From the IMG/VR virus record IMGVR_UViG_3300005529_000001, positions 124,001 through 188,000 of that record: a stretch of 64,000 nt of DNA. One strand, given 5' to 3'. The notes beneath the pieces are model-generated. The model saw nothing but the letters and a program-made list of their open reading frames with translations, was not told the DNA's origin and did no database searches. Position 1 is the stretch's first letter. Each line of letters opens with the position of its first letter. Below are positions 3,865-63,153 of this stretch, in pieces. The translations under genes were made by a program, and so were the position numbers.

Positions 3865-4263
3865 TTACGTATCTTGTTCGGACAGCTTCTGGGTCTCATG
3901 ACCAAAGAACAACAATGACCGTGAGTGTTCAAGGGCCCAACCCACGCCTATCTCACATGATCGCATCGTCGCGTAACATTTGATCGTTCGCCCGTGGTTT
4001 TCAGGGGCGACAAGAGCGTAGAAATCAATGCACTCGCTCGATTGCGTTTCAACATTGATTTCTCGAAGATCGCCGACACCTGTGATGAAAACGATGTCAC
4101 CGTTCGGGTGCCGCCCCGCCGCCACCACAATCCTCGCCCTGTCTGGATCAACACGCACCAGTTCCAATTCTTTCGTGGGCAACAGCTTCATGTAAGCGGG
4201 CACTTCAACGGTGACTGGCCCCTTGACGTGAATGTCAGAGTTGGGTGCGATCGTCAACTCCAT
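3865..4263 (-). CDS. hypothetical protein
   Basis: Globular-looking 132 aa ORF divergent from glf. Confidence 0.6.
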   Translation of the reverse strand: MELTIAPNSDIHVKGPVTVEVPAYMKLLPTKELELVRVDPDRARIVVAAGRHPNGDIVFITGVGDLREINVETQSSECIDFYALVAPENHGRTIKCYATMRSCEIGVGWALEHSRSLLFFGHETQKLSEQDT

Positions 4264-4316
4264 TTCAGAACAAGGTACAACGTCTGGGGATAAGGTACAT
4301 GCCTAGGTACCTACAG

Positions 4317-5423
4317 ATGCTCCCGTATGACTATCTGATCGTAGGTGCAGGTCTGTTCGGATCGACTTTCGCGTGGCACGCTAGACAACGTGGCAAGCGT
4401 GTCTTGGTCATAGACAAACGAAACCACGTGGGCGGGAACTGCTACACCCACCAGGTTGAAGGGATCCACGTCCATGCTTATGGCCCGCACATCTTCCACA
4501 CGAGCGATCAACAGGTCTGGTCATTCGTCAACAGGTTCGCTAGCTTTCACAAGTACGTGCACCGGGTCAAGGCTCGGCACGGTGACAAGCTGCTATCTTT
4601 GCCCGTCAACCTGATGACGTTCAACAAGCTATGGGACGTAAAGACGCCAGAAGAAGCCGAGGCAAGGCTCCAACAAGCCAGGACAGTTTGCCCGCATCCC
4701 AAGAACATGGAAGAGTGGGCCCTGTCGCAGGTCGGACCCGAGATCTACGAATTGCTCTTCAAACACTACACCACCAAACAATGGGGCCGAGACCCAAACC
4801 AGATGCCCGCCGCTGTGTTGAAGCGTCTGCCGATCAGGCTCACCTGGGATGACAACTACTATGATGACAAGTGGCAAGGGATCCCAACTGGCGGCTACAC
4901 CCGGATATTTGACGGGCTGTTAGAGGGCTGCGATGTCCGTCTGGGAATCGACTATCTGGCACACCGTGAAGAGCTTGACAAGCTAGCACGGGTTGTGGTG
5001 TACACAGGCCAAGTAGATGCGTATTACGATTACGCGTTGGGCAGGTTAGAATACCGCACGCTTGACTTTGAAACAAAGGTAATCCCCCACAGCAACTACC
5101 AAGGTTGCGCACAGCTGAACTGGACGGGCCCAGAAGTTCCCTGGACTCGGACAATCGAACACAAGCATTTCGAACTCACCGATGTGCCTGCTACCGTTGT
5201 CACGTGGGAGACACCTGCAGCGTACAAACCGGGTGATGAGCCCTACTACCCGATCAACGATACTAGGAACAACGATCTCTACATGAGGTATAAAGACCTA
5301 GCCGATCACGAACCCGGGGTCTTGTTTGGCGGACGGCTGGGAACCTATCGCTATTTTGACATGCACCAGGTGATTGCACAAGCAATGCACCTGGCGAAAC
5401 AAGAAGGGTTGATTGATGTCTGA
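4317..5423 (+). CDS. glf: UDP-galactopyranose mutase
   Basis: YDYLIVGAGLFG, GGNCY, YGPHIFHT, YTTKQWG, GRLGTYRYFDM; alternative start 4299. Confidence 0.95.
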   Translation: MLPYDYLIVGAGLFGSTFAWHARQRGKRVLVIDKRNHVGGNCYTHQVEGIHVHAYGPHIFHTSDQQVWSFVNRFASFHKYVHRVKARHGDKLLSLPVNLMTFNKLWDVKTPEEAEARLQQARTVCPHPKNMEEWALSQVGPEIYELLFKHYTTKQWGRDPNQMPAAVLKRLPIRLTWDDNYYDDKWQGIPTGGYTRIFDGLLEGCDVRLGIDYLAHREELDKLARVVVYTGQVDAYYDYALGRLEYRTLDFETKVIPHSNYQGCAQLNWTGPEVPWTRTIEHKHFELTDVPATVVTWETPAAYKPGDEPYYPINDTRNNDLYMRYKDLADHEPGVLFGGRLGTYRYFDMHQVIAQAMHLAKQEGLIDV

Positions 5424-6117
5424 CGTTCTTGCTTCTTTCTTGCTGCCATCTCGTGGACGAATCGATCGTTTGGTCCAGAGCATGCAATCAGTTCACCGTC
5501 GCAACGGCAACGTCTCACGTTGGGGTGAGATTCCCAACTATGAGTTCCTGATCCGTGCCGATGACGATGATGTCGCAACAGTCAACGTGCTTAAGAAGCA
5601 CTACGTTGGTGATCCGTACACTCGGGTCACGTTTGGTCCACGTGGACGTGGTTACCTGGACCTGCACTTGATGGTCAACGAGCTCGCCGCGCAAGCACGG
5701 GGTGAGTTCTTGGTCCTCTGGAACGACGATGCATTCATGGTCACTCCAGACTGGGATGACGTGCTGTTAAAGCACCTCAATGATCCACCCCTGATTTACC
5801 ATCCGACTTCTGCGGGCACCACTCGTAACATCTTTCCGATCGTCCGCCGTAGCATCTACCAAGCCATGGGCCGGTTTAGCGAGAGCGCCCTTAACGATTT
5901 TTACGTCTGGACGCTTGCAAAAAGGCTTGGTATCAACACGCAGATCAACATTGATGTCCGCCATGACCATCCGCAAGTTGGTGGGACAACGATCGATCAG
6001 ACGTACGTCGATGCAATGAAAGCGTGCACCGTTGTCAAAAATGACGACAAAGACCCACGGATCTTAGCGTGCTTGGACGAAGACGAAGCAAAGATCCGAG
6101 CGCTTCTCAGTAAGTGA
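5413..6117 (+). CDS. GT-A (GT2-like) glycosyltransferase
   Basis: LLPSRGR, IRADDDD, ARGEFLVLWNDD; overlaps glf stop. Confidence 0.75.
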   Translation: MMSDVLASFLLPSRGRIDRLVQSMQSVHRRNGNVSRWGEIPNYEFLIRADDDDVATVNVLKKHYVGDPYTRVTFGPRGRGYLDLHLMVNELAAQARGEFLVLWNDDAFMVTPDWDDVLLKHLNDPPLIYHPTSAGTTRNIFPIVRRSIYQAMGRFSESALNDFYVWTLAKRLGINTQINIDVRHDHPQVGGTTIDQTYVDAMKACTVVKNDDKDPRILACLDEDEAKIRALLSK

Positions 6118-6886
6118 GAAGTTGTCGCCAGTGTTCAGGCATGAGCTGAACCTCGCCCACCGCATATGGATCCCCGAATTGGTTTGACTGTTTATCGATA
6201 TTAGCGAACACATCAATAACAGACTGACGATCAGCGATGTTTAACCGGGCTGAATGACGACGGAAATACTCGTCAACATCGAGACACCAACCGTGAAGTA
6301 ACGACAGTGTTGGGTCAATTGGCTCATTGACTTGTTTGATACCATTCAAGTAAAAGTTATGGAAGCCCCTCTGGTACGTCATTGGCACTTTTGTCACCAG
6401 TGTCTTGTCATACATGGGTAGCCTCCACATCGACCGTCTGTCAACAAGGAGTTGAGCGCCTGGCGTCCGTGACAGCATCGCTTCACCCGGTTGTTGTACC
6501 ACATTCCACCCAACTGCACGTCTCCACTGGTCTTTTGACTTCAGGAAACGCTCACAATAGTCTCGCAAGTTAACGTACTTGGCATTGGGGATCAGGAACT
6601 CGTCGGTCTCGGCAAAGACAACGACGGGGTAGCGTTGGAGCAACTCACGTTGCATTTGCTCAACAACCTGTTTCAAAAACAGACTGACGTGAGTTCCACG
6701 TGACGGCACACACACAAAATTGACCCGAGGGTGAAGCAATCGTGCTTCTTCCACGCTCCCATCATCAGTTGAGTTATCGATCACATAGACGTCTTCAGGC
6801 GGAAAATTGCTGGTGTAGTAATTCAGCCACGTCCGGAGAAACAACGGCTCGTTTCGTGTGATGGTAAAAGCAGCGAAGTCTCCCAT
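6107..6886 (-). CDS. GT-A glycosyltransferase (Glyco_tranf_2_4/GT92-like)
   Basis: ITRNE..FL..WLNYY, VIDNSTDDGS, FAETDEFL. Confidence 0.75.
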   Translation of the reverse strand: MGDFAAFTITRNEPLFLRTWLNYYTSNFPPEDVYVIDNSTDDGSVEEARLLHPRVNFVCVPSRGTHVSLFLKQVVEQMQRELLQRYPVVVFAETDEFLIPNAKYVNLRDYCERFLKSKDQWRRAVGWNVVQQPGEAMLSRTPGAQLLVDRRSMWRLPMYDKTLVTKVPMTYQRGFHNFYLNGIKQVNEPIDPTLSLLHGWCLDVDEYFRRHSARLNIADRQSVIDVFANIDKQSNQFGDPYAVGEVQLMPEHWRQLLTY

Positions 6887-18528: not shown

Positions 18529-18561
18529 TGATTCCCTCCGTGGGAGTTGTGAGACCATCAT

Positions 18562-18597: not shown

Positions 18598-18622
18598 CCC
18601 CAATTTAGCTACGATGTTGTCT

Positions 18623-19922: not shown

Positions 19923-19927
19923 GGTTT

Positions 19928-22954: not shown

Positions 22955-24028
22955 TCAGACGTATTTGTAGCTTGCCAGCAACTTTCCAGCAGCCTCAAAG
23001 TCTTCGGGAGTTTTGATTGGTTGGTAACGTGCCTGTCGGGGTACACAGACGTATTGCGTTGGAAACTCTTCGGTGTATTGCTGCAACAATCGTTCGTGTT
23101 GGACGACGAGTTTGTTACCCATCTGTTTTCTGGTGCGATGCCAACGCCATTCGATGTTTGATTTTAGGACGTCAACATCAATGATCATTGTATTGGTATT
23201 GTGAAACTTTGCCTCATCAGCAAAACCAGCGGGTAACCGCCAGTCTTCAGCAACCTGCAAGCGGTTGTTGACATACGCTAACACGCCACCTTTGTCACTT
23301 GGCAAGCGCTCGACAACCTCTACTGTTACGTTAACGCCCTGGCGCTTGTGGAAACCCAACAAGCCGCTATGTGGTGCAGCTAGCACGTTATCAACGTTAC
23401 AGATGAAAGCGTACTTGACGTCGGGATACTCGTCAAGGACCCCGTTCTCAACCAGAGCAGGTCCCACATCACCGTGGCCCAACGGATATAGATCGGGGGC
23501 ACCGGGAGCGAACAGAGCAAGCCTGTTGTCCGGTGTCAACCTATAACCCTCAAACTGGGTGAAGATGCTTCCACGCGTCTTTGGTGACAACGCAAGCGTA
23601 TGCATGTGACGAGCGACGCTGCTTTGCATGTCAGGCGAGGTCATGATCCAGATGGGCATGTCTCCACCCTGCATCAGTTTCCAAGCCAACAAGCTGGTTT
23701 CGACGCCCGGGATCTTGGCAAAGACCTTGGGACCACCCACCCGAGTCCCGGTCCCGCCCGCCAAAATGACAAAAGCGACCTCACCCCGACGAACCATCTC
23801 GTCTCCAACGAGTTCATCACCGTTGCTGATCTCATCAATTGAGTAAACGCTCTTTGGGTCTGGGTGATCGGGCAAGTACATCGCGGGGTCTGCGTCCTGC
23901 CTAGTCGTCATCCGGACGAGCTCTTCGTCAGTCAACCCACCAGCTCGATGGACTCGAGCCTGGAATTCGGGCAACACCTGGGTCAGCTCTTCACGTAACG
24001 AACGTGCGAAGCCAGGTTCAGGTTTCAC
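22955..24028 (-). CDS. UDPGP/AGX-family UTP:sugar-1-phosphate uridylyltransferase
   Basis: VILAGGTGTR.GGPK, P.GHGD, CNVDNV, KGG, NTN. Confidence 0.85.
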   Translation of the reverse strand: MKPEPGFARSLREELTQVLPEFQARVHRAGGLTDEELVRMTTRQDADPAMYLPDHPDPKSVYSIDEISNGDELVGDEMVRRGEVAFVILAGGTGTRVGGPKVFAKIPGVETSLLAWKLMQGGDMPIWIMTSPDMQSSVARHMHTLALSPKTRGSIFTQFEGYRLTPDNRLALFAPGAPDLYPLGHGDVGPALVENGVLDEYPDVKYAFICNVDNVLAAPHSGLLGFHKRQGVNVTVEVVERLPSDKGGVLAYVNNRLQVAEDWRLPAGFADEAKFHNTNTMIIDVDVLKSNIEWRWHRTRKQMGNKLVVQHERLLQQYTEEFPTQYVCVPRQARYQPIKTPEDFEAAGKLLASYKYV

Positions 24029-46445: not shown

Positions 46446-46452
46446 CCCAACA

Positions 46453-46842
46453 TCACATCTCCCACTCGTCGCCCGTCCATTTCATGTCGCTGCCACCGCC
46501 AGCGAGATTCGCGACGGCTTCATCGTCATAGAAGTGAAGAACGTATCCGGGGAAATCGGACAATGCATTTTCATAGTATGGGCTATCAAAATCACCGAAC
46601 GCTTGCAACGACCAACGGCACTGATCAGGTGAAAGCAACCCAGGCTCTTGTGGGTCCCAATCTCCCGTCTCTTTGGCGGCTTCTACGTTATCTTTGTAGA
46701 GTTCCAGTGCAGAAGCCCATGCTTCAGGAAAGAACTGCATGACCTGGTCAATTGACAATGGCACGGTATGCTGACCGCTACTAATGTCTGGCTTGAGGGC
46801 TTCTTGAATCAGCTTCTTGAGCTTACCGATTGTTGTTTTCAT
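46453..46842 (-). CDS. acidic protein with N-terminal leader
   Basis: MKTTIGKLKKLIQEAL. Confidence 0.65.
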   Translation of the reverse strand: MKTTIGKLKKLIQEALKPDISSGQHTVPLSIDQVMQFFPEAWASALELYKDNVEAAKETGDWDPQEPGLLSPDQCRWSLQAFGDFDSPYYENALSDFPGYVLHFYDDEAVANLAGGGSDMKWTGDEWEM

Positions 46843-53135: not shown

Positions 53136-53795
53136 TCAGACTGTAAACTGTCCAGCTTTGAATTGTTTGTCAGTCACTCTTATCAACTTCAAGTTATTCT
53201 TGTGGAACCACTCGTCCTGTCGCCTATCGATCTGGTACTTCAACAGGATTGTACGATCGCGTGGCGTCTTGAACCTCATAATCTCTTCCAGCGAGCGGTC
53301 AAGCCCGTGCCAGTACTCGCCGTCAAACTGCACGTAGGTATCGATGCTCTTAACGTAAAAGTCGATGGGCCACTTGTTGACGACAACTTGACGTTCTACG
53401 TTGCCGAACTGTAACACGAGCCACTCGTAAAACGCATCTTCACTCTTGGAGTTGAAGTACGAACCGTTCCGTTTCATCGTCTCATGACGTTGTCGGCACT
53501 TTTCGGGCGTGTTAGCTAGAAAATGTACTTCAGGAAGCGAGAGAACTGATTTGACACCAAAGCGTGCTAGTACGGTCGCTTGTTGCTTAGCAACAACATC
53601 AGGTTGAACTCTTGCCTGCGTACACAGTTCTCGATGTTCAGCTTGCGAACACTTACATGAACAGAAGTGTTGTGGTTGGCTCTCATATCCCGACGAGAAG
53701 TTTGTTACGAATCTTCGACCACAGTGATCACACTGAACTTCCAGCTTTTGAAGAGGCTTACGACGACTAGGCACTGAAAACTTACGAAGCAACAC
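53136..53795 (-). mobile_element. free-standing DUF559/Vsr-like endonuclease (putative homing endonuclease)
   Basis: N-terminal CDHC...FCSCKC; SKSE, IDFY, QFDGEYWH, D..QD......LIRV; visibly more A/T-rich than flanks. Confidence 0.7.
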
Positions 53796-54125: not shown

Positions 54126-54689
54126 CTATCGCCGGGCCAGAGCTTGGTAGATGGCTTCCTGCAGGGTCAACACCTCGACCCCAGCGCTTTTCAGGAGATC
54201 GATCCCATCAGTGATCCGATACGGGATCTCATAGACGACTCTGGCAATCTCCGCGTTGACGATCAGCTTCGCACACTCCTTGCACGGGCTGTTCGTCACG
54301 TACATGTGCTTCGGTCTGGCAAAGTTGTAGTCGCACTTGACGAGAGCGTTGACCTCAGCGTGGACAGTGCCGCTCTTCCCGCGTTCGAGCGATTCAACGT
54401 GATTGGGACCGCCCTTCCACATCCCGTTGTACCCTACGCTGAGCATCTGCGTGTTGTTCGACGAAACGACGATCGCTCCCACTTTCAATGCCGGGTCGAT
54501 CGAGCGCAAAGCGATTGTCTTTGCGACCTGCATCCAGACTGACGGCCAGGTCGGACGTTCGGGTTCCTTGTCCTCAACGAGAACAGTCAAGCAGAACTTG
54601 CACGTCTGCCCACCGGCATCATTCTCCACCCAATGATGGAAGATGTCTTTGGTGTTTGCTAGACACGCTTCGTTTAGGTTTCCCATCAA
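54126..54689 (-). CDS. dCMP deaminase
   Basis: VGAIVV, SVGYNG, HAEVNAL, SPCKECAKLI. Confidence 0.92.
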   Translation of the reverse strand: MMGNLNEACLANTKDIFHHWVENDAGGQTCKFCLTVLVEDKEPERPTWPSVWMQVAKTIALRSIDPALKVGAIVVSSNNTQMLSVGYNGMWKGGPNHVESLERGKSGTVHAEVNALVKCDYNFARPKHMYVTNSPCKECAKLIVNAEIARVVYEIPYRITDGIDLLKSAGVEVLTLQEAIYQALARR

Positions 54690-55867: not shown

Positions 55868-55897
55868 ATCCTACCATCGTTGGTGGTTGGTTTTCAC
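55868..55897 (-). promoter_or_regulatory. putative promoter GTGAAA-N18-(TGG)TAGGAT, leaderless
   Basis: 6 nt before ATG 55861. Confidence 0.55.
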
Positions 55898-56475
55898 TCT
55901 TTCGCGATGTTCGCTCGTTTGTCAACGGCAAGATGGTGGCGAAAGCAACGCGGCTCATAGAGCTCCGCGCCACCGACCTGGATCTCCTCGCCGTCTGTCT
56001 GTTTCTTGTGAGTGTAGAAAGCGTCACGCCCACATTCAGTGCAGACCGCTGCACATTTTTCGACATGCGTTGCCCAAGCCATCAGCTTCTCGACCTCGTG
56101 GAATGGCTTGCCCAGGTATGACAGGTCCAACGTTGAGACCACGACATCGATGCCGAGCTGGTAAAGGTAGATCAGGACGTCGGCGACGCCCGGGATCATG
56201 AACGCTTCGTCAACGGCAACCACCTCGGGCATCTGTTCCGCTTCCGCAAGCGCGCCCAAGATGTCTGACCCCTCCTTGACAAGGGTAGCATCGTGTTTCC
56301 AGCCCGAGTGACTGACAACCTCAGTGTTGCTGTACCTGGCATCGATCGCGGGCTTGAAGACCTGGATTCGCTTGTGTTGGTACTTGGCACGCTCAAGAGC
56401 GAGCAACAGTTTCGTCGTTTTTGACGAGAACATTGCGCCCGCGAAGACCGTCAGCGTTGGGTTCTGCCCGCTCAT
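55894..56475 (-). CDS. tdk: thymidine kinase (type II)
   Basis: GAMFSSKTT, KP.ID.RY, AVDEA.F, C..CG, YEPRC..H. Confidence 0.93.
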   Translation of the reverse strand: MSGQNPTLTVFAGAMFSSKTTKLLLALERAKYQHKRIQVFKPAIDARYSNTEVVSHSGWKHDATLVKEGSDILGALAEAEQMPEVVAVDEAFMIPGVADVLIYLYQLGIDVVVSTLDLSYLGKPFHEVEKLMAWATHVEKCAAVCTECGRDAFYTHKKQTDGEEIQVGGAELYEPRCFRHHLAVDKRANIAKE

Positions 56476-57029
56476 GCGAACCTATGTTCCAGGATGACGA
56501 AGGGAGCGCGGCACACCGAGTCATACCTTGCTGCAGCCTCAAGGGCTAACGTGATTCGTTTCTTTGGGTCCATTTGCATGTCTCTTGTCGCGTACATTGC
56601 CCCGTTGGCAACTTGCGCGCCCACACCGATGCAACAGTAATCATCCTGAGGACAACCAACATCAAAATCTTCTTCGATGGAATAGAGCTTGCCGTTGTAT
56701 CCCACCAGCAACCCAACCGAGTGAAACTCTTCTTCGTCTTCCCTCTTCAGAGATCCTTTTTCCTTGTGCAACTCTCTGACAGCATCGATGAAGTTGATGA
56801 CCATGTAAGCCATGTCATCGTGCTTCTTGGGCTTGTCAGGTGCTTCGAAAGCGTACCGCAACAGCTGTCCCACACGGAAGCTTCCCGCAAAACCTATGAT
56901 GAAGTCACCGTTGATGAAGACTTTTTCGTCAGCCCGGCCGAGAACAGAGGTGCCTTTCGTATCGGATGCCAACGAATCAGCACCCATATAGATCACGCCG
57001 TTCTCGACCAAGCCAACGATACAGGTCAT
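56472..57029 (-). CDS. HslV/proteasome-like Ntn peptidase, paralog 1
   Basis: MTCIVG (Thr1), GADS, KVF, IGFAGS, IGVGA. Confidence 0.8.
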   Translation of the reverse strand: MTCIVGLVENGVIYMGADSLASDTKGTSVLGRADEKVFINGDFIIGFAGSFRVGQLLRYAFEAPDKPKKHDDMAYMVINFIDAVRELHKEKGSLKREDEEEFHSVGLLVGYNGKLYSIEEDFDVGCPQDDYCCIGVGAQVANGAMYATRDMQMDPKKRITLALEAAARYDSVCRAPFVILEHRFA

Positions 57030-57033
57030 GGAC

Positions 57034-57603
57034 TCAGTTCCGGTTCTTCACCACCAGCGTATCGAACGGTGGAGCACAGCCTGCGTTCTTGGTAGAAGCT
57101 TCGAGTGCCATGAGAACACGCTTCTTGGCGCCGCCCCACATTTTCTTGGTCGCTTCGAACGAACCGAGCGCCAGCTTGCTGCCGCTGCCGACAGAAGCAA
57201 ACTTCTCATCGCCTTCGACCAGCTGAAAGTTACCCTCGAGCGTGTAGAGATGGCCACGATAAGCGACCAACATCGCGCCTTCAAAGCAGATCTCACCGTT
57301 ACCGCCGAATGGGCTGTTGTCAGGACCCGCTGCGTCGAGCTTCTTGAGGCCCTCGCGGATCGCTGGAACTAGCTCGGTCACTAGGAACTGCCTATCATCG
57401 CCGCCTGCCTGGATGGGCAGCTCGATGCCATGTTTTAGCGCGTCCATGACCTTGGGCAGGCCGCAGACACCAAAGCCCACATCGCCCTTTGCAAAGATCT
57501 TGGGCTCCTTGAGCAAGGTCCTATTGAGACCGCCATCCGTGGCCGCCCGATCTCCGCCGAGCCACACCTTGTTCCCATCAACCAAACCGACTATGCAGGT
57601 CAT
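57034..57603 (-). CDS. HslV/proteasome-like Ntn peptidase, paralog 2
   Basis: MTCIVG (Thr1), GGDR, KIF, SVGSGS..ALG. Confidence 0.8.
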   Translation of the reverse strand: MTCIVGLVDGNKVWLGGDRAATDGGLNRTLLKEPKIFAKGDVGFGVCGLPKVMDALKHGIELPIQAGGDDRQFLVTELVPAIREGLKKLDAAGPDNSPFGGNGEICFEGAMLVAYRGHLYTLEGNFQLVEGDEKFASVGSGSKLALGSFEATKKMWGGAKKRVLMALEASTKNAGCAPPFDTLVVKNRN

Positions 57604-57785: not shown

Positions 57786-58553
57786 TCATCCTTCCTTTGT
57801 GTTGTACGGCGAGTCTGGGTAGAGTTCACGGTATTGTGACTTGGATACGGCGATCTCTCCCGTCTTGGTAAAATGGTCTACCAAGTAGAAGTGTCGCTCG
57901 TAGACGTGGAGACTGCCTGCGCTCCAGTGAATGTCACCCTCAGGCAACTGGAGATCCTTGGCAAGGTTGGCAAGGACGGTATACTGCCAGGCTCGATCGT
58001 TCTTGTAACCCAGAACCGCGTCATTGGATCGCATCTGGACCACGGCATGAAGAGCACCATCACGGACTAGGTACTGTACCGCGTTGGTGCACATGAAGTC
58101 GCTCCGGCCATCGATGTTGTACTCCTCCCACATCGAGGGACGGGTGTAGATGACAACAGCCCTCCGGCTCTCCGGGTTTTTCTTGAGCTCGGCCAGCACT
58201 TTTGTGTACTGGCCACCGTTCTCTGGGCTGTAGGTCGTCCACCCGTAGTTGCTGTTGATGGTACCGTCCTTAGAAGCGACAGCTTTCCACACCGTGGGTG
58301 CCCCGCCCGGGATGTCATTGACGTTCCGGCTCTGGCTCATGTACCACATCTCCTCGCGGTGGATGTAGTCCCAGTCAACCTTGCCGAACAGGGCGTCGTC
58401 CGAAGCGATGAAGTTAGCCCCAACGATCTCAATCGTCCTCTTGCCAACCAGAGAGGTCATCGACGCTTCCCGGTTGACGCTAGTGAATTTCTCCTCGGCA
58501 AGAAGAGAAGCGAATTGGTCCCTGATCGACTGCGTTGAATTGTAGAGCGTCAT
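57786..58553 (-). CDS. dCMP hydroxymethylase (T4 gp42-like, thymidylate synthase superfamily)
   Basis: KRTIEIVGANF, INSNYGW, NPESRR..IYTRPSM, DFMCTN, MRSND..GYKND.AWQ, GSLHVYERHFYLVDH track recalled T4 gp42; Asp rather than TS Asn. Confidence 0.9.
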   Translation of the reverse strand: MTLYNSTQSIRDQFASLLAEEKFTSVNREASMTSLVGKRTIEIVGANFIASDDALFGKVDWDYIHREEMWYMSQSRNVNDIPGGAPTVWKAVASKDGTINSNYGWTTYSPENGGQYTKVLAELKKNPESRRAVVIYTRPSMWEEYNIDGRSDFMCTNAVQYLVRDGALHAVVQMRSNDAVLGYKNDRAWQYTVLANLAKDLQLPEGDIHWSAGSLHVYERHFYLVDHFTKTGEIAVSKSQYRELYPDSPYNTKEG

Positions 58554-59503
58554 TTGTTAAGCTTCATCTTTCCGACCCAATCCCAGTTGTCTTCGTACCA
58601 TTTGACGGTCCGATCCAGACCCTCCCAGAACCTGACCAGTGGGACATATCCTAACAACTGTTGTGCTTTTGTCACGTCGGCTTGGGTGTGCATGACATCG
58701 CCGGCGCGCCAGGGCGCGTTGCAGACCTGAGCACCTGGATAACGCTTGCCCAGCTCGATGATGATGTCACGGTTAGTCGTTCGGTCTCCACATGCTACGT
58801 TGATGCACTCAGCATTGAGCAAACCTGATACGTTTCCAGCCTTGACACACGCATCGACAACGTTGTCAACGTAACACATGTCGCGGCTCTGGCTGCCGTC
58901 GCCGTCGCTACGAAGAGGGATGCCCTTCTTGATCGCTGTCAACCAGGCTGACACCGCGGTTGAATACGGGCTGTCACCCAGCTGGTTGGGTCCAAAGACA
59001 TTGAAGAAACGCAAACAAACGCTGTCAAGCTTGTAAAGATCGCGGTACAAGACCAGGTAATCTTCAATGATCGACTTCTGAAGAGCATATGGTGACTTGG
59101 GGTTCTTACGCTCGTTCTCGCTGGTGGGTAGTATGTCAGCCCCACCGTATACCGACGAGCTAGACGCGAAAACGAACCGCTTGACGTTGTCCCGACAGGC
59201 ATCCATCAACGCCAACGTCCGGGACACGTTGACGTGGTTGGTTTCTAGCGGGTGCTCGACTGAGTACGACACCCTGGGAACAGCCGCCAAGTGAAAGATG
59301 ACATCGTACCTGCCCTGCTTTATCTCGTGCAATACATCAGCATGAGCAAAATCTTTCGTGATTACCGCCTGGCCATGAGGTACAAACTCCAGGTGACCGT
59401 TGGACAGATCGTCAACAGTGTCAACATCCCACCCTTCGTCCAAGCAACGCTTGACAAGGTTCGATCCGATGAAGCCCGCGCCGCCAGTGACAAGGACGTG
59501 CAT
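58550..59503 (-). CDS. NAD-dependent NDP-sugar epimerase (GalE/WbpP-like)
   Basis: GGAGFIG, FHLAA, ASSSSVYG, YALQK (YxxxK), RFFNVFGP, GDG.QSRD. Confidence 0.93.
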   Translation of the reverse strand: MHVLVTGGAGFIGSNLVKRCLDEGWDVDTVDDLSNGHLEFVPHGQAVITKDFAHADVLHEIKQGRYDVIFHLAAVPRVSYSVEHPLETNHVNVSRTLALMDACRDNVKRFVFASSSSVYGGADILPTSENERKNPKSPYALQKSIIEDYLVLYRDLYKLDSVCLRFFNVFGPNQLGDSPYSTAVSAWLTAIKKGIPLRSDGDGSQSRDMCYVDNVVDACVKAGNVSGLLNAECINVACGDRTTNRDIIIELGKRYPGAQVCNAPWRAGDVMHTQADVTKAQQLLGYVPLVRFWEGLDRTVKWYEDNWDWVGKMKLNK

Positions 59504-59509
59504 GAGCGG

Positions 59510-59515
59510 ATCATA
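59510..59515 (-). promoter_or_regulatory. -10-like TATGAT heading the epimerase-hydroxymethylase operon
   Basis: 6 nt before ATG 59503. Confidence 0.55.
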
Positions 59516-59536
59516 ACCCGCCCGCCGTCCAAAGTT

Positions 59537-60058
59537 TCAGTACCGCGTGGTGTCGACCCAAGCACCGTCGGCAGGAACCCACTGCCACGGTGGCATGTCT
59601 TCCTCTTCGCTTGGTTCACCCTCGGTTGCCATCAGAGCCCAAGGAACACCATCAACAACAATCGATGGGTCATTTTCGTCGACCGCTTCAAGGACGTAAA
59701 AGTACGTGAGATCAGCAGGAGCATCAGCAAGAGCAACAACGGCTTCAGGCACCATCTTTTCTAGCTCTTGAAGGGTGAATGCCTGCATGTGATGCAAGCC
59801 CTCAGACAACACCTTCATGGCATCGTTGACGTAATAGTCGAGGATGTCGGCTTCGACCTTGTTGGATCCTGCTTCCTGGACTGCGCTGCTCCAGCTCGTG
59901 AAGGTAGTGTCCCACCCATCACTGTCATCTGTGAACCGGCGACCGATCTTAGCCTCGACAAGACGTCGAAACTTCCGATGATCATCAATGATCATTTCTT
60001 CATTCAGTGCGCGTTCGATCTCCTCACGCACCAGGGCCCTTAGCGACTTCTCATCCAT
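59537..60058 (-). CDS. acidic protein with N-terminal leader
   Basis: MDEKSLRALVREEIERALNEE; TACTTA 6 nt upstream. Confidence 0.65.
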   Translation of the reverse strand: MDEKSLRALVREEIERALNEEMIIDDHRKFRRLVEAKIGRRFTDDSDGWDTTFTSWSSAVQEAGSNKVEADILDYYVNDAMKVLSEGLHHMQAFTLQELEKMVPEAVVALADAPADLTYFYVLEAVDENDPSIVVDGVPWALMATEGEPSEEEDMPPWQWVPADGAWVDTTRY

Positions 60059-60059
60059 G

Positions 60060-61424
60060 TCAGGTAAGTAGGCCCATCCTGCGCATGGCGGCGGGAGTTG
60101 TTGCCTCGTAGGAGCACCGCTTCCTGATGACTTCCAACAGCTTCTGGTTGATGTTGTGACGGGCATTCTCCCGTGATGGACACTGAACACGCCCAATCGA
60201 CCTGTCAAGCAAATCAACCAAATTGATGAGATTTACTTCACCCAGCACGTATTGGCTCACCCCAGCCTCCTCAGCCAGGCTCGAATACTCGTAGTTGTCG
60301 AGCCACAGTGGCATGCATCCCAACTCGACGCATTCTCGAGCAGCTGTCCCGCCATACGGATCCTTGTTATAGAGGCCCAGAGCGATGTGGGAGTTCCGTG
60401 CCACGTACTTGTACTCGTCACGGTTGAAAGTGTCATCCGTCAGCTTGACGTAGCCGTTGGCCCCACATTTCTCTTCGAGCTCAGCGTTAGAGAACTTGAA
60501 ATTTGGATTGCCACACACTACGACGTAGTCCCGTCGCCGTTGTCGCAGCTGGGGAAGGATATCGAACATGAACTTCATACCGTTGGTATAGTCGCCGCTC
60601 GACGGAGAGATCCGATTGGGGAAGAACAGGACGCACTTTCCCTCCGTCTTGGCTTTCCATTCCGCCGCAGAAAAACGGACGTTCTTCATGTCAGGTTCCA
60701 GCAACGTCTCCGCCGAGGAGTACCCGTCGTCCCAGGGCATTGACTTGGCACGAACGTCATCAACCACGTCCTGGGTGAACCACTTGCCCATGCTGTCAAA
60801 GAACTGCAACATCGCTGACTCGCACTGCCAGAAGTTGTAGTCGGCCCGGAGTGCGGCTTCACACTGGCCAAGCCACAGTGAACACTCTTGCGGGAACTTG
60901 GGGACTTCAGGCACATCTACAAAGTGGGAGTGGACGTAGAACTTGGGTTGGTAACCACCGTTGATGTGAAACATCGCCTTGAAGTTACGAAGGTGCATCG
61001 GATCATTGATGTAGACCGCGTCGTACTTCAACTCTGGGTGCTTTTTGTGATTGTGGATCCCGATGCTCAGGGAGACCTTGTTGAAGTTGAGATCGTACCT
61101 GGTCGCCAGCGCGTTTGCCATTACTTCGTGCTGGATATAGTTGAGCCGGCCCCGGTCTTCTTTGGTCGGATCGACATAACCATAGAGGCAATGCCAGTCA
61201 AGATCCGGGTTGACGATCCACGGATAATCAACGCACTGGCTAGCGTTTTCATAGTAGGTATCGAACAGCTTCGGTCCCATCACGTCGATCTGGAGATCTG
61301 GGTTGCGGCGCAACATCTCTCGCACCCGCCCCATCACCATCTGCCACCCGCTGTCGCAAGCCAGGTCAAACTTGTTGTGTTTGTAGTTGATGTTACTCAG
61401 CTGAGTCTGGACTAGCAGGCGCAT
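60060..61424 (-). CDS. GT-B-fold glycosyltransferase (candidate DNA glycosyltransferase)
   Basis: Two-domain size; FFPNRIS..DYTNG, YGG.AARE.VELGC.PL; start MRLLVQ after GGAAAGG. Confidence 0.7.
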   Translation of the reverse strand: MRLLVQTQLSNINYKHNKFDLACDSGWQMVMGRVREMLRRNPDLQIDVMGPKLFDTYYENASQCVDYPWIVNPDLDWHCLYGYVDPTKEDRGRLNYIQHEVMANALATRYDLNFNKVSLSIGIHNHKKHPELKYDAVYINDPMHLRNFKAMFHINGGYQPKFYVHSHFVDVPEVPKFPQECSLWLGQCEAALRADYNFWQCESAMLQFFDSMGKWFTQDVVDDVRAKSMPWDDGYSSAETLLEPDMKNVRFSAAEWKAKTEGKCVLFFPNRISPSSGDYTNGMKFMFDILPQLRQRRRDYVVVCGNPNFKFSNAELEEKCGANGYVKLTDDTFNRDEYKYVARNSHIALGLYNKDPYGGTAARECVELGCMPLWLDNYEYSSLAEEAGVSQYVLGEVNLINLVDLLDRSIGRVQCPSRENARHNINQKLLEVIRKRCSYEATTPAAMRRMGLLT

Positions 61425-61761
61425 GCTTGAACCTTTCCCTGATGTCGGCGTGGTGTTCATCGCAGTGTGCACGTGCCTGCTCAAAAAGCGCAACTAGGAT
61501 GCGACGCAGTTTCCTGTTGTCGTCGAAAGTCAGGTCTTCAATGATTTCCCTGGCGCAGTGCTCAGCCCACTTCTCCTTGTTGAACGTGACCTCACCGTAC
61601 TGATCATCGATCACCCATGACCCGGGCGCTGCGGCTTTTGACCTGAACTTGGTCTTGAAGGTGATGTGACCGCTCGACCAATCCTCGAAGCCAGGAACGC
61701 ACTCCTTTCGAGCGTCGAGCATGTGGAACTCGACGCCCATGATGAAAGCGCTCTTGCTCAT
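61393..61761 (-). CDS. hypothetical protein
   Basis: ATGA overlap with exonuclease stop. Confidence 0.55.
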   Translation of the reverse strand: MSKSAFIMGVEFHMLDARKECVPGFEDWSSGHITFKTKFRSKAAAPGSWVIDDQYGEVTFNKEKWAEHCAREIIEDLTFDDNRKLRRILVALFEQARAHCDEHHADIRERFKHAPASPDSAE

Positions 61762-62321
61762 GTCGTGCTTCGCTTCAGGTTCTGTCTCAGCCACTCGGTA
61801 CACTCCTTACCATGTGCGATGCTCTCGAGAACGTCGTCTTGGGCACGGTGCGCTTGGGCTTTCTTGAGCTGCGGCATTCCCATCGACCGGCAGTACAGTT
61901 TCAGCACCGAGACGTCATAGCACCTGACATCGTTCTCACGGAACTCGAACCGCGTTGCTACCCTAGGCATGTGGACTTTCATGAACTTGTAATCAAAACG
62001 GATGCTAGATCCTCCCATGACGGGTCGTTCGTCTGGGTCACCAACAAGCGGGACAACACGAAGGAGGTCTTCCTCAACGTCCCGTACCTGTTTCGCAAGC
62101 CACGACGAACAGTCAGCAAGCAGACCGTTCTTGGTGTGCATCTCCAAGACGATCGGTCTCAGATCAGATGGAATCCACGGGGCCAACGGCATCACTGCAT
62201 GGTACACGGGCCTGGCGTTGAAGGGGTCGTTGAAGTCCGCGACGGACACCGCGAGCTCCAACGGCTTGTCTTTGTCAGGATCGATGCCCGTTGACTCAAA
62301 GTCAAGCCAGAAGATCTTCAT
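61758..62321 (-). CDS. DEDDh 3'-5' exonuclease (oligoribonuclease-like)
   Basis: WLDFESTG, EMH.KNGL, GSSI.FD..F, DVS, HRA.DD..ES. Confidence 0.9.
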   Translation of the reverse strand: MKIFWLDFESTGIDPDKDKPLELAVSVADFNDPFNARPVYHAVMPLAPWIPSDLRPIVLEMHTKNGLLADCSSWLAKQVRDVEEDLLRVVPLVGDPDERPVMGGSSIRFDYKFMKVHMPRVATRFEFRENDVRCYDVSVLKLYCRSMGMPQLKKAQAHRAQDDVLESIAHGKECTEWLRQNLKRSTT

Positions 62322-62602
62322 GCGTTTCTCAGCGCAGCTGTCAGCAAACCGATCAATGGTCGCAACGTTTGTCCCGTACGCGCTGCCTCTTTCCCACCGC
62401 GACTGAGCAGCGCATCTAAGGATAACGCCATTGCTCGAGCTTCATCGTGGTCGAGCTCAATGGTGACTGTCTTCGCCAACCGCTTGGGATCAGTCTTAGC
62501 GTTCTCCCAGATGCCCAAGCAAGTGGGACACCCATCGGGATACTTCGCTGTCTTCATCGGCATCCGACGTGCCTGGTACTTCGGGTGTTCTTTGCACTTC
62601 AT
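62318..62602 (-). CDS. hypothetical protein
   Basis: C..H...C..C; operon-coupled. Confidence 0.55.
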   Translation of the reverse strand: MKCKEHPKYQARRMPMKTAKYPDGCPTCLGIWENAKTDPKRLAKTVTIELDHDEARAMALSLDALLSRGGKEAARTGQTLRPLIGLLTAALRNA

Positions 62603-63153
62603 CAGACCACCCTGTAGATGAAATAATGAACGTCATCGAGCTCACGTTGGAGGTTCTCATCGTCAACGTTGAGCTTCAGGAGCTTGCATTTGGTCCATGA
62701 CGCAAAGTCCATGTACGCATCATGGATCTGCTGGAGCGTCTCCCCCTTGACGGTTGGGTCAAGATCATCAACGATCTTTGAGTAATCTGTACGGCAAGCA
62801 AGGATGATGCGAGCGTCGAGCTTGGCCCACTCTTCGTCGAGATGCCTCAGCATCCTGTCGTCAGTCACCCGGCCGAACGTCTTGCTGTAAGCATACTCGC
62901 ATGGGTAACCACGATCGAAGATGACAGACTGGCCTGTTTGTTTGAGCAGGTCCATAACCCGGGGGTCAGCATACCGCAGCTGTTCTAGGAACAGCTCACG
63001 TTTCGAGACCCGGCTTGACAAGAAAGCATCGTGCTCGCTCGACGCCTTGAAGTAAGGGATGTCGGTGACCCTGGAGAGGGCCTTGCTTATCTCTGTTTTC
63101 CCAGACATGTCGGGCCCAACGAAGAAAACGATGCGTTGCCGTCCCACGTACAT
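62602..63153 (-). CDS. P-loop nucleoside-monophosphate kinase (thymidylate/dNMP kinase-like)
   Basis: GPDMSGKT, FDR..P.EY.Y. Confidence 0.8.
   Translation of the reverse strand: MYVGRQRIVFFVGPDMSGKTEISKALSRVTDIPYFKASSEHDAFLSSRVSKRELFLEQLRYADPRVMDLLKQTGQSVIFDRGYPCEYAYSKTFGRVTDDRMLRHLDEEWAKLDARIILACRTDYSKIVDDLDPTVKGETLQQIHDAYMDFASWTKCKLLKLNVDDENLQRELDDVHYFIYRVV

What the first reader, a model, noticed from the sequence alone, without database searches (positions are those of the whole stretch)
57786..63153. Candidate new glycosylated-hydroxymethylcytosine DNA modification system
Seen: a T4 gp42-like dCMP hydroxymethylase (catalytic DFMCTN Cys; YKND Asp where thymidylate synthase has Asn) starts inside the stop codon of an NDP-sugar epimerase (ATGA overlap at 58550-58553). 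Just upstream on the same strand are a GT-B glycosyltransferase, a DEDDh exonuclease and a dNMP kinase, with thymidine kinase and dCMP deaminase downstream. Established: T4 makes hmdCMP with gp42, phosphorylates it with a phage kinase and glucosylates hmC in DNA with GT-B enzymes, using UDP-glucose that needs no epimerase. Inference: coupling an epimerase to the hydroxymethylase suggests the sugar is not glucose (Gal/GalNAc or a derivative), giving a different hypermodified base in a non-T4-like jumbo phage.
Basis: partly seen in the sequence, partly recalled or inferred. Interest (0 to 1): 0.86.

Follow-up and report, generated by a model that had tools for sequence, protein, structure and literature searches.

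The report
Phage cytosine hydroxymethylation and glycosylation genes
A 369-kb soil-type jumbo phage carries a T4-like enzyme that makes hydroxymethyl-cytosine, next to a sugar epimerase, a nucleotide kinase and a phage-only glycosyltransferase family, so it probably coats its DNA with a sugar other than glucose; this is a new variant of a known anti-restriction strategy, and no chemistry has been shown.

Summary
On the minus strand lie a Tmk-like kinase, a DEDDh exonuclease, a 454-aa protein, an SDR epimerase and a thymidylate-synthase homologue, with thymidine kinase and dCMP deaminase further on. The ATGA overlap at 58550-58553 is real.

- **Hydroxymethylase:** E 3.5e-74 to T4 gp42. It matches gp42 at all 11 active-site positions and lacks the 5-hydroxycytosine-synthase signature.
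- **Glycosyltransferase:** the 454-aa protein hits no sequence library. Its model (pLDDT 93.6) is a retaining-type GT-B.
- **Family distribution:** small, almost absent from 185,579 cellular genomes, with no match among 50,697 deposited phage records.
- **Synteny:** in 31 IMG/VR loci the family sits with the kinase and a gp42-signature TS homologue from three deep clades. In 26 of 28 loci with readable flanks an epimerase is also present.
- **Remote relatives:** in other phage lineages they again lie beside nucleotide-metabolism or sugar-nucleotide genes.

The likeliest reading is pre-replicative 5hmC followed by glycosylation with an epimerase-supplied sugar (GalNAc or Gal type).

Three caveats apply. 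The overlap is the array's usual junction style. The exonuclease probably serves replication. Epimerase-dependent glycosylation of 5hmC has already been shown for TET-type phage pathways. I rate it a new variant of a known kind, unproven biochemically.

The parts
62602..63153 (-). Tmk/dNK-like P-loop nucleotide kinase, the candidate 5hm-dCMP kinase
   Evidence: PHROG 761 thymidylate kinase 7e-9. The family profile hits deoxynucleoside kinase 2JAQ at 1.4e-4 and YorR 3KB2. The AF2 model (pLDDT 84.7) matches thymidylate kinases, dAK and YorR. It is present next to the GT-B in all 31 loci where the flank exists. It is 31-33% identical to kinases beside remote GT relatives in L099 and L103.
62318..62602 (-). 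94-aa ORF of unknown function, overlapping both neighbours
   Evidence: No family hit. Homologues occur only in L007-L009 and L029.
61758..62321 (-). DEDDh (RNase T / oligoribonuclease-like) exonuclease, probably serving replication or RNA turnover and not the modification core
   Evidence: PF00929 at 2.7e-10. PHROG 192 'DNA polymerase exonuclease subunit'. Oligoribonuclease model at 77 bits, below its 106-bit cut-off. It is missing from about half of the related loci. A Pol III alpha gene lies just upstream.
61393..61803 (-). 136-aa ORF of unknown function
   Evidence: No family hit. It is poorly conserved.
60060..61424 (-). GT-B fold glycosyltransferase of an unannotated, phage-restricted family, the candidate DNA (5hmC) glycosyltransferase
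   Evidence: There are no sequence-library hits. The AF2 model has pLDDT 93.6 and pTM 0.91. Foldseek hits are sucrose-phosphate synthase, GlgM, MshA, BshA, glycogen synthase, OtsA and PimA at E 1e-8 to 4e-11. It has 357 metagenomic homologues and 148 cluster representatives among 1.84 billion. Only one fragment occurs in 185,579 cellular genomes.
59537..60058 (-). About 173-aa ORF of unknown function between the GT and the epimerase (a variable slot)
   Evidence: The internal ATG is at 60058. There is no family hit. It is conserved only in L007. Other loci carry different inserts or none at this position.
58550..59503 (-). Extended-SDR NDP-sugar 4-epimerase, WbpP/WbgU-like
   Evidence: PF01370 at 5e-52. 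The best solved relatives are 6WJB, 6DNT and WbgU at E 1e-47 to 1e-51. GGAGFIG and the Ser...YxxxK triad are aligned. Thr sits where E. coli GalE has Tyr299 and the HexNAc epimerases have Ser.
57786..58553 (-). dCMP hydroxymethylase (T4 gp42 type 5hm-dCMP synthase)
   Evidence: E 3.5e-74 to 1B49 and 50-52% identity to T4-like gp42 homologues. It is identical to gp42 at 11 active-site positions, including L143D, C146, D169 and N177D. It falls in a 100/100 clade with T4 gp42. It is only 27% identical to the RB69 5-hydroxy-dCMP synthase.
55894..56475 (-). Thymidine kinase (accompanying pyrimidine metabolism)
   Evidence: PF00265 at 2.3e-39. It is syntenic in most loci.
54126..54689 (-). dCMP deaminase (accompanying pyrimidine metabolism)
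   Evidence: HAEVNA and PCKECA zinc motifs are present in the translation. Homologues carry PF00383. It is syntenic in nearly all loci and also lies beside remote GT relatives.
4245..6886 (.). Possible accessory sugar module with an unproven link: UDP-galactopyranose mutase (4245-5423, +), GT2 (5413-6117, +), GT2 (6107-6886, -)
   Evidence: PF03275 at 5e-74. Weak GT2 hits. The arrangement is found only on this contig, and Glf alone is also on the contig of L025.
22955..24028 (-). Possible accessory gene: UDPGP-family nucleotide-sugar pyrophosphorylase
   Evidence: PF01704 at 5.7e-22. It is only distantly related to solved UGPases and UAP, at E about 1e-7.

Best explanation
The cluster encodes a two-stage cytosine hypermodification pathway.

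Stage 1, before replication:
- The gp42-type enzyme converts dCMP to 5-hydroxymethyl-dCMP using methylene-tetrahydrofolate.
- The adjacent Tmk-like kinase phosphorylates it. A cellular NDP kinase completes the triphosphate.
- The phage's own Pol III-type replicase incorporates it in place of C.
- dCMP deaminase and thymidine kinase balance the pyrimidine pools.

Stage 2, after replication:
- The 454-aa retaining-type GT-B transfers a sugar from a UDP-sugar onto the hydroxymethyl group in DNA.
- The neighbouring 4-epimerase makes that donor from a common host nucleotide sugar. UDP-GalNAc from UDP-GlcNAc is most likely. UDP-Gal from UDP-Glc is the alternative.

The result would be glycosyl-5hmC DNA that resists host restriction and CRISPR nucleases.

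What is shown and what is inferred:
- Shown by sequence and fold: the identity and active-site signature of the hydroxymethylase, the folds of the GT and the kinase, the subfamily of the epimerase, and the conserved neighbourhood.
- Inferred: that the kinase acts on 5hm-dCMP, that the GT's acceptor is 5hmC in DNA, the identity of the sugar, and the degree of replacement of C.
For: Hydroxymethylase:
- E 3.5e-74 to T4 gp42 structures.
- Identical to gp42 at W80, Y94, D143, C146, T147, M165, R166, S167, D169, G173 and D177. It differs from ThyA and from the 5hoC synthases RB69 gp48 and phiM9 td.2.
- It falls in a 100/100 clade with gp42.
- The diagnostic residues are taken from PMC13326640.

Glycosyltransferase:
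- High-confidence GT-B model.
- Its best structural neighbours are MshA 3C4Q, BshA 3MBO, PimA 2GEJ and a sucrose-phosphate synthase. These or their close relatives are the templates reported for phage DNA arabinosyltransferases in PMC13326640 Table 1.

Genomic association:
- In 31 IMG/VR loci (GT identity 41-100%) the GT sits with the kinase and a TS homologue. An epimerase is present in 26 of 28 loci with a readable flank.
- Every TS homologue has the gp42 signature, although they belong to three deep clades. The slot has been refilled by different genes with the same predicted chemistry.
- GT and epimerase are directly adjacent (0-63 nt) in nine loci.

Remote GT relatives (E 1e-14 to 1e-80) in other phage lineages:
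- L099 to L101: UDP-sugar dehydrogenase plus SDR plus GT, with a 4-nt overlap in L100 and L101.
- L099 and L103: a homologous kinase.
- L100 to L102 and L105: dCMP deaminase.
- L099, L100 and L105: dUTPase_2.
- L100, L104 and L105: TS homologues.
- L105: SHMT.

Family distribution:
- Essentially absent from 185,579 cellular genomes.

Epimerase and kinase:
- The epimerase is closest to UDP-GlcNAc/GalNAc 4-epimerases, with a small gatekeeper residue.
- The kinase fold matches Tmk, YorR and dNK. These are the templates reported for the kinases in the RB69, DLP3 and RL38J1 clusters.
Against: - There is no biochemical or read-level evidence. The acceptor of the GT is inferred from neighbourhood only.
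- The GT's nearest structures act on small phosphorylated acceptors, not DNA. It shows no sequence similarity to T4 alpha/beta-GT families (no Pfam hit), to RB69 gp46/47 or to phiM9 gp269.
- No dCTPase (MazG- or dUTPase-type) and no gp1-type dNMP kinase were found among the roughly 80 window ORFs scanned. Only two NUDIX hydrolases were found. Full replacement of C is therefore not assured. The other roughly 300 kb of the genome could not be read.
- The epimerase is missing near the GT in L027, L032 and L105.
- The best viral structural neighbours are Arthrobacter phage GTs of unknown role.
- The epimerase scores below every NCBIfam equivalog cut-off, so its substrate is a prediction.
Confidence: 0.6

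Rival explanations
1. The DNA carries plain 5hmC, or partly replaced C. The GT-B and epimerase glycosylate something else, such as virion proteins, a host envelope component or a small molecule. They would sit in the early nucleotide-metabolism array only through linkage.
For: - The best BFVD structural neighbours are Arthrobacter phage glycosyltransferases of unknown role.
- PDB neighbours use small-molecule acceptors.
- A separate Glf plus GT2 module and a UDPGP-family enzyme elsewhere in the window show that this phage handles nucleotide sugars for possibly other ends.
- In other phages Glf often sits beside SDR epimerases, in 14 of 57 loci.
Against: - The association of this GT family with TS homologues, dCMP deaminase, dUTPase_2 and the kinase recurs in unrelated phage lineages, and with three non-orthologous TS clades.
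- The family is virtually absent from cellular genomes.
- There are no structural or lysis genes in the array.
Confidence: 0.15
2. The GT does glycosylate 5hmC in DNA, but with a common host sugar (glucose from UDP-Glc, as in T4). The epimerase serves another purpose, for example feeding UDP-Gal to the Glf/GT2 module.
For: - Three loci have the GT, the kinase and a TS homologue but no epimerase nearby (L027, L032, L105).
- In the published TET-type systems one GT worked without its epimerase.
- The window also encodes Glf, which needs UDP-Galp.
Against: - An epimerase is present in 26 of 28 family loci and is directly adjacent to the GT in nine.
- Remote relatives keep an SDR translationally coupled to the GT.
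- Glf is found on only two of the GT-bearing contigs.
Confidence: 0.12
3. Glycosylation happens at the nucleotide level. The GT would act on 5hm-dCMP, a small phosphorylated acceptor. The dedicated Tmk-like kinase would then phosphorylate the glycosylated nucleotide, and the phage Pol III-type polymerase would incorporate it.
For: - The nearest structures (SPS, OtsA, MshA, GlgM) all glycosylate small phosphorylated acceptors.
- A dedicated, strictly co-inherited kinase of a non-gp1 type accompanies the GT even in remote lineages.
Against: - The same structural templates were reported for arabinosyltransferases that were shown to act on DNA.
- All known phage sugar modifications are installed after replication (established knowledge; PMC13326640 abstract).
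Confidence: 0.07
4. The TS homologue is not a hydroxymethylase. It would be a dCMP methylase, a thymidylate synthase or a 5-hydroxy-dCMP synthase, and then there would be no hydroxymethyl handle for a sugar.
For: Product specificity in this superfamily has surprised before: RB69 gp48 was long annotated as a hydroxymethylase.
Against: - Asp at the N177 position excludes dUMP specificity.
- Asp at the L143 position and Asp kept at the 169 position match gp42, not ThyA or the 5hoC synthases.
- It is 50-52% identical to gp42 homologues and only 27% identical to RB69 gp48.
Confidence: 0.04

Closest known systems
T4 glucosyl-5hmC pathway (gp42 dCMP hydroxymethylase, gp1 dNMP kinase, gp56 dCTPase, alpha- and beta-glucosyltransferases)
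   Same: The hydroxymethylase is a true gp42 relative with an identical active-site signature. In T4 a GT-B gene also lies beside the hydroxymethylase, as beta-gt is next to gene 42. dCMP deaminase and thymidine kinase accompany the pathway.
   Different: The GT belongs to a different, unannotated GT-B family of GT4-like retaining type, with no Pfam hit for the T4 GT families. The kinase is Tmk/dNK-like, not gp1-like. No dCTPase was seen in the window. An epimerase is present. The replicase is Pol III alpha-type, and the genome is 369 kb at 55% GC.
Epimerase-paired DNA glycosyltransferase clusters ('subclass II') of TET/5mYOX phages (bioRxiv 10.1101/2023.12.21.572611)
   Same: A sugar epimerase next to a GT supplies a non-glucose donor. 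Hex, HexNAc and HexA adducts on 5hmC were shown by co-expression. That study also mined TS-associated GT contigs with epimerases.
   Different: There, 5hmC is made on DNA by a methyltransferase plus a dioxygenase, and the epimerase-paired GTs have a GT-A fold. Here 5hmC is made as a nucleotide by a gp42-type enzyme, and the GT is a GT-B with no detectable sequence relation to T4 beta-GT-like enzymes.
Glycosyl-5-hydroxycytosine clusters of RB69, DLP3 and Pootjesviridae (RL38J1, phiM9): TS homologue, GT and Tmk-like 'nucleotide kinase' (PMC13326640)
   Same: The three-gene logic is the same: TS homologue, GT-B and Tmk-like kinase. The structural templates for GT and kinase are the same. Pootjesviridae also encode Glf. 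One remote member of this GT family (P0203 in L104) sits directly after an RB69-like 5hoC synthase.
   Different: The window's TS homologue keeps Asp169, Trp80 and Gly173, so it is the hydroxymethyl type, not the hydroxy type. The GT shows no sequence similarity to RB69 gp46/47 or phiM9 gp269. The sugar supply is an epimerase rather than an arabinose pathway.

Membership tests
T4 gp42-type dCMP hydroxymethylase (thymidylate synthase superfamily) | TS fold with the catalytic cysteine (E. coli C146 / T4 C148) | tested here: met
   PF00303 at 6e-21. Cys aligns in DFMCTN.
T4 gp42-type dCMP hydroxymethylase (thymidylate synthase superfamily) | Asp in place of Asn177 (cytosine specificity), and an acidic residue in place of Leu143 (water access, hydroxymethyl product) | tested here: met
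   Positions 177 and 143 are both Asp in an alignment with E. coli ThyA and T4 gp42. The criteria come from PMC13326640.
T4 gp42-type dCMP hydroxymethylase (thymidylate synthase superfamily) | Full-length similarity to, and clade membership with, gp42 | tested here: met
   E 3.5e-74 over residues 34-242. It falls in a 100/100 clade with T4 gp42.
T4 gp42-type dCMP hydroxymethylase (thymidylate synthase superfamily) | Product is 5-hydroxymethyl-dCMP | not testable with these tools
   Needs an enzyme or in vivo product assay.
5-hydroxy-dCMP synthase (RB69 gp48 type) | Asn in place of Asp169 (diagnostic), together with Ala80 and Val173 | tested here: not met
   The window protein has D169, W80 and G173. 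RB69 gp48 and phiM9 td.2 have N, A and V. Identity to gp48 is 27%.
T4 alpha-/beta-glucosyltransferase families | Sequence membership in the T4 GT families | tested here: not met
   There is no Pfam, PHROG or NCBIfam hit at E <= 0.01 and no tblastn match in 50,697 phage records. T4 GT structures are not among the top 50 fold matches.
T4 alpha-/beta-glucosyltransferase families | GT-B two-Rossmann fold | tested here: met
   pLDDT 93.6, with 383 PDB matches at E <= 0.001; the 50 listed are almost all GT-B enzymes.
T4 alpha-/beta-glucosyltransferase families | Transfers sugar to 5hmC in duplex DNA | not testable with these tools
   Inferred only from gene neighbourhood.
GT4-like retaining GT-B glycosyltransferases (Glycos_transf_1) | Match to the family models above threshold | tested here: inconclusive
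   The window protein has no hit. Remote family members give sub-threshold hits to PF00534 (1.5e-5), PF13439 (0.0017) and QTMAN_N. Structural neighbours are GT4, GT5 and GT20 enzymes.
UDP-hexose / UDP-HexNAc 4-epimerase (extended SDR) | GxxGxxG NAD site and the Ser...YxxxK catalytic triad, without the Asp-Glu pair of 4,6-dehydratases | tested here: met
   GGAGFIG, SSSSVYG and SPYALQK align with WbgU and 6WJB. That a dehydratase pair is absent is read from the sequence using established motif knowledge.
UDP-hexose / UDP-HexNAc 4-epimerase (extended SDR) | Score above a curated equivalog cut-off (GalE, TviC) | tested here: not met
   TviC scores 160 bits against a cut-off of 760. GalE scores 145 against 262. 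The subfamily is therefore inferred from the nearest structures.
UDP-hexose / UDP-HexNAc 4-epimerase (extended SDR) | Small residue at the GalE Tyr299 'gatekeeper' position, which permits N-acetylated substrates | tested here: met
   Thr aligns with Tyr299 of E. coli GalE and with Ser of 6WJB, 6DNT and WbgU. The functional meaning comes from the literature on WbpP and GalE, recalled and not tested here.
Epimerase-paired DNA-GT clusters of TET/5mYOX phages (subclass II) | Cytosine methyltransferase plus 5mYOX dioxygenase as the source of 5hmC, and a GT-A fold GT | tested here: not met
   No such domains occur in the array. The GT is GT-B.
Thymidylate/deoxynucleoside kinase-like P-loop kinases | P-loop and Tmk/dNK fold | tested here: met
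   GPDMSGKT is present. The profile hits 2JAQ and 3KB2. Fold hits are to Tmk at E about 1e-5 to 1e-6. The substrate was not testable.

The most novel reading that the evidence does not exclude
A previously undescribed, phage-only GT-B family installs an epimerase-derived sugar (GalNAc or Gal type, perhaps extended with galactofuranose by the Glf/GT2 genes) on pre-replicatively made 5hmC. Together with its dedicated Tmk-like kinase and an NDP-sugar SDR, it would give soil jumbo phages a hypermodified base not yet seen in any isolate. The same GT family would serve both 5hmC-type and 5hoC-type pathways in other lineages.
Probability: 0.4. Interest if true: 0.65.

Novelty: new variant of a known kind. 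Interest (0 to 1): 0.55.

Why it matters
Sugar-coated cytosines are a main way in which phages escape restriction enzymes and CRISPR nucleases, and they are a source of enzymes for DNA labelling.

If the prediction holds, this cluster adds several things:
- a new DNA glycosyltransferase family with no cultured representative;
- a probable new base (HexNAc- or Gal-5hmC);
- a portable kinase-epimerase-GT module that occurs with different hydroxymethylase lineages.

It would also flag a whole clade of 300-370 kb environmental phages as having modified DNA. That matters for how well they are sequenced and for how hosts could be assigned.

Tried and rejected
- Sequence searches with the 454-aa protein found nothing: Pfam, PHROGs, NCBIfam, PDB by phmmer and by profile, and tblastn against 50,697 phage records. 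Only the predicted fold identified it.
- Profile comparison of the GT family with the candidate DNA glycosyltransferases of phiM9 (gp269) and RB69 (gp46 and gp47, compared as separate pieces) gave no relation, with probability below 1%. tblastn with a remote member (P0203) against phages also found nothing.
- I considered that the TS homologue could be a 5-hydroxy-dCMP synthase, as recently shown for RB69. The diagnostic residues and the tree reject this.
- I considered the Glf/GT2/UDPGP genes as part of one pathway (Glc-1-P to UDP-Glc to UDP-Gal to UDP-Galf). Glf is found on only one other GT-bearing contig, and the Glf-GT2-GT2 arrangement is unique to this contig. The link therefore stays open and is listed only as possible.
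- A search for a dCTPase among about 80 window ORFs found none, only two NUDIX proteins.
- Promoter and terminator scans were at chance level. No tRNA genes were found.
- DNA-level search found no close cultured relative of the region.

Full report
**Observation.** The region is a tightly packed, co-directional gene array on the minus strand. In order of transcription it holds:
- a P-loop kinase (62602-63153);
- a 94-aa ORF;
- an RNase T-like DEDDh exonuclease (61758-62321);
- a 136-aa ORF;
- a 454-aa protein (60060-61424);
- an ORF of about 173 aa;
- an SDR epimerase (58550-59503);
- a thymidylate-synthase homologue (57786-58553);
- a 60-aa ORF;
- two HslV-like paralogues;
- thymidine kinase (55894-56475);
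- a CCA-adding-type nucleotidyltransferase;
- dCMP deaminase (54126-54689).

The ATGA overlap of the epimerase stop and the hydroxymethylase start is real. However, 4-nt overlaps join four other gene pairs in the same array. The overlap is therefore the array's usual junction and no evidence of a special link. The window is part of IMGVR_UViG_3300005529_000001, 369,475 bp, so 'jumbo' is right. No cultured phage is close at the DNA level.

**The hydroxymethylase.**
- It matches the solved T4 dCMP hydroxymethylase at E 3.5e-74. The next best hits, true thymidylate synthases, score about 1e-14.
- It is 50-52% identical to gp42 homologues of T4-like phages.
- A 2026 paper showed that some 'hydroxymethylase-like' TS homologues (RB69 gp48, DLP3 gp80, RL38J1 gp216) in fact make 5-hydroxy-dCMP. 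It gave diagnostic residues: Asn177 to Asp for cytosine, Leu143 to Asp/Glu for a non-methyl product, and Asp169 to Asn for hydroxylation (PMC13326640).
- I aligned the window protein with E. coli ThyA, T4 gp42, RB69 gp48 and both phiM9 TS homologues. At the eleven positions around C5 it equals gp42 (W80, Y94, D143, C146, T147, M165, R166, S167, D169, G173, D177). It differs from the 5hoC synthases (A80, E143, N169, V173).
- It is only 27% identical to RB69 gp48 and lies in a 100/100 clade with T4 gp42.
- The assignment as a 5hm-dCMP synthase is as firm as sequence can make it.

**The glycosyltransferase.**
- The 454-aa protein matches nothing in Pfam, PHROGs, NCBIfam or PDB sequences, and nothing in 50,697 deposited phage genomes.
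- It has 357 metagenomic homologues, many on contigs of 300-370 kb.
- A model built on 43 of them is very confident (pLDDT 93.6, pTM 0.91).
- The model matches retaining GT-B enzymes at E 1e-8 to 4e-11: sucrose-phosphate synthase, GlgM, MshA, BshA, glycogen synthase, OtsA and PimA.
- MshA, BshA, PimA and a sucrose-phosphate synthase are also the templates reported for the DNA arabinosyltransferases of DLP3 and RB69.
- Among viral models the best matches are Arthrobacter phage GTs. A cyanophage 'DNA alpha-GT' ranks 18th.
- The family is small, with 148 representatives at E <= 1e-3 among 1.84 billion cluster representatives.
- It is all but absent from 185,579 bacterial and archaeal genomes, where only one 1-kb fragment was found.
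- Some remote members give sub-threshold hits to Glycos_transf_1, Glyco_transf_4 and the queuosine-tRNA mannosyltransferase N-domain. It is therefore a divergent, phage-restricted offshoot of GT4-like enzymes.

**The epimerase and the kinase.**
- The SDR protein has the NAD motif and the Ser/Tyr/Lys triad.
- It is closest to UDP-GlcNAc/GalNAc 4-epimerases (6WJB, 6DNT, WbgU, WbpP; E 1e-41 to 1e-52). It is less close to E. coli GalE (30% identity).
- Where GalE has the bulky Tyr299 it has Thr, and the HexNAc epimerases have Ser. By the established gatekeeper rule, recalled and not tested here, this allows N-acetylated substrates.
- It is below all NCBIfam equivalog cut-offs, so the substrate is a prediction.
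- The kinase family profile hits deoxynucleoside kinase and YorR. Its model matches thymidylate kinases. These are again the templates reported for the 'nucleotide kinases' inside the RB69, DLP3 and RL38J1 clusters.

**Comparative evidence within the family.**
- In 31 IMG/VR loci carrying a relative of the GT (41-100% identity), the kinase and a TS homologue are present wherever the flank exists. An epimerase is present in 26 of 28. TK and dCMP deaminase are present in most.
- All TS homologues have the gp42 signature at the eleven positions. Yet they fall into three deep clades separated by long branches. The slot beside the GT has thus been filled by different lineages of the same predicted enzyme. 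This argues for function rather than mere inheritance.
- The GT and the epimerase are directly adjacent in nine loci. The epimerase-hydroxymethylase junction varies, with 0 to 2.4 kb between them and the order reversed in three loci.

**Comparative evidence from remote relatives.** Remote GT relatives (E 1e-14 to 1e-80) lie on unrelated, mostly smaller phage contigs:
- L100 and L101 have UDP-sugar dehydrogenase, then SDR, then GT with a 4-nt overlap. L100 also has dCMP deaminase, a B-family polymerase and a TS homologue with Asp177.
- L099 has dUTPase_2, dehydrogenase, SDR, a kinase 31% identical to the window's, UDG, and then the GT.
- L102 has the GT, a deoxyribosyltransferase-like gene, a U32 peptidase and dCMP deaminase.
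- L104 has an RB69-like 5hoC-type TS homologue directly followed by the GT.
- L105 has the GT, a Tmk-like kinase, dUTPase_2, dCMP deaminase, a TS homologue, SHMT and Pol III alpha.

In five of the seven remote contigs read (L099 to L102 and L105) the family sits among pyrimidine-nucleotide genes. On the short contig L104 its one identified neighbour is a TS homologue, and on L103 it is a homologous kinase.

**Mechanism.** The best-supported reading is a T4-like logic with different parts.
1. 5hm-dCMP is made by the gp42-type enzyme.
2. It is phosphorylated by the Tmk-like kinase and incorporated during replication.
3. It is then glycosylated on DNA by the GT-B.
4. The donor is made by the epimerase from a host UDP-sugar. 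UDP-GalNAc is most likely and UDP-Gal is possible.

The acceptor, the sugar and the extent of replacement are inferences. No dCTPase or gp1-type kinase was found among about 80 window ORFs scanned, only two NUDIX hydrolases. Most of the genome lies outside the window.

**Other sugar genes.** The window also encodes:
- a UDP-galactopyranose mutase overlapped by a GT2 gene;
- a second GT2 gene, convergent with the first (4245-6886);
- a UDPGP-family pyrophosphorylase (22955-24028).

Glf also occurs in Pootjesviridae and in Aeromonas phages. Pootjesviridae have glycosylated cytosine, and Aeromonas phages supplied the T4-like hydroxymethylase hits, so a role in extending the DNA glycan is conceivable. 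However, Glf was found on only one other GT-bearing contig, and the Glf-GT2-GT2 arrangement is unique here. I list the module as possible, not as part of the system.

**Rivals.**
- The GT and epimerase serve another target and the DNA carries plain 5hmC (0.15).
- The sugar is ordinary glucose and the epimerase has another role (0.12).
- Glycosylation occurs on the nucleotide before polymerisation (0.07). This would be truly new. It is hinted at only by the small-phosphorylated-acceptor templates and the dedicated kinase.
- The TS homologue makes something else (0.04).

**Comparison with what is known, and novelty.** The system works like the T4 pathway and like the TS-GT-kinase clusters of RB69, DLP3 and RL38J1. 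The pairing of an epimerase with a DNA GT acting on 5hmC was shown experimentally for TET-type phage clusters. That study also mined TS-associated GT contigs. What is new here:
- the GT family, which is unannotated, has no cultured member, and is unrelated by sequence to the T4, RB69 or phiM9 enzymes;
- its combination with a gp42-type enzyme and a HexNAc-type epimerase;
- its spread through a clade of 100-370 kb environmental phages with a Pol III alpha-type replicase.

I rate it a new variant of a known kind, with interest 0.55.

Noticed in passing
window 56472-57603 (-): Two tandem HslV / proteasome-beta-like Ntn-hydrolase paralogues (PHROG 1040, 1.7e-23 and 1.9e-15) lie between the hydroxymethylase and thymidine kinase. 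The pair is conserved at this position in most related loci. No HslU-like partner was seen nearby.
   Followed up: partly
window 4245-6886: UDP-galactopyranose mutase (PF03275, 5e-74) overlaps a GT2 gene by 11 nt and is followed by a convergent second GT2 gene. The GT2 next to Glf is a candidate galactofuranosyltransferase. The arrangement is unique to this contig among 57 Glf loci.
   Followed up: partly
window 22955-24028 (-): A short (357 aa) UDPGP-family nucleotide-sugar pyrophosphorylase. It is only distantly related to solved UDP-Glc and UDP-GlcNAc pyrophosphorylases (E about 1e-7), and its specificity is unknown.
   Followed up: partly
window 26293-26856 (-) and 39220-39681 (-): Two NUDIX hydrolases. 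They are the only candidates seen in the window for a dCTP-clearing activity, since no MazG- or dUTPase-type dCTPase was found.
   Followed up: no
window 54686-55861 (-): A CCA-adding / poly(A) polymerase family nucleotidyltransferase overlaps dCMP deaminase by 4 nt, yet no tRNA gene is detected anywhere in the 64-kb window.
   Followed up: no
window 9899-21826, 34325-34741, 45481-47660 and 51842-52600: An unusual set of cellular-type genes for a phage. It includes a GroEL-like chaperonin, an AAA ATPase, a TANGO2-family protein, an ADP-ribosylglycohydrolase, an Fpg/Nei DNA glycosylase and a trypsin-like protease. It also includes an EamA transporter fragment, pterin-4a-carbinolamine dehydratase, a CN hydrolase and a protein with an Fe/Mn superoxide dismutase C-domain.
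   Followed up: no
L014, L015, L019, L020, L025, L026, L028, L031-L034, L036 (TS homologue next to the GT): In these related loci the slot beside the GT is filled by TS homologues only 26-35% identical to the window's. They belong to two further deep clades but have exactly the gp42 active-site signature. They may be hydroxymethylase lineages that have not been characterised.
   Followed up: partly
L104:469-2473: A remote member of the GT family (P0203) directly follows a TS homologue that is 52% identical to RB69 gp48 and has the 5-hydroxycytosine-synthase signature. The GT family may therefore also serve 5hoC pathways.
   Followed up: partly
L099-L101 and L105: Remote GT relatives are preceded by a UDP-glucose/GDP-mannose dehydrogenase plus an SDR, which suggests a uronic-acid donor. 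In L105 a serine hydroxymethyltransferase follows the TS homologue, which would regenerate methylene-tetrahydrofolate.
   Followed up: no
L016:7221-7844 and six other loci; L032:12693-13541; L034:6933-7841; L026:9137-9991: Variable extras occur inside the cluster in relatives. A weak SAM-methyltransferase-like gene lies right after the kinase in seven loci. There is also an ATP-grasp (RimK-like) gene, a radical-SAM gene, and an Apyc1-type anti-Pycsar metallo-beta-lactamase.
   Followed up: no
window 53136-53795 (-): A weak HNH-endonuclease-like ORF lies between dCMP deaminase and the SOD-like gene, possibly a homing endonuclease. Related loci carry GIY-YIG, DUF7487 and Vsr-like inserts, and split, intein-bearing Pol III alpha genes.
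   Followed up: no
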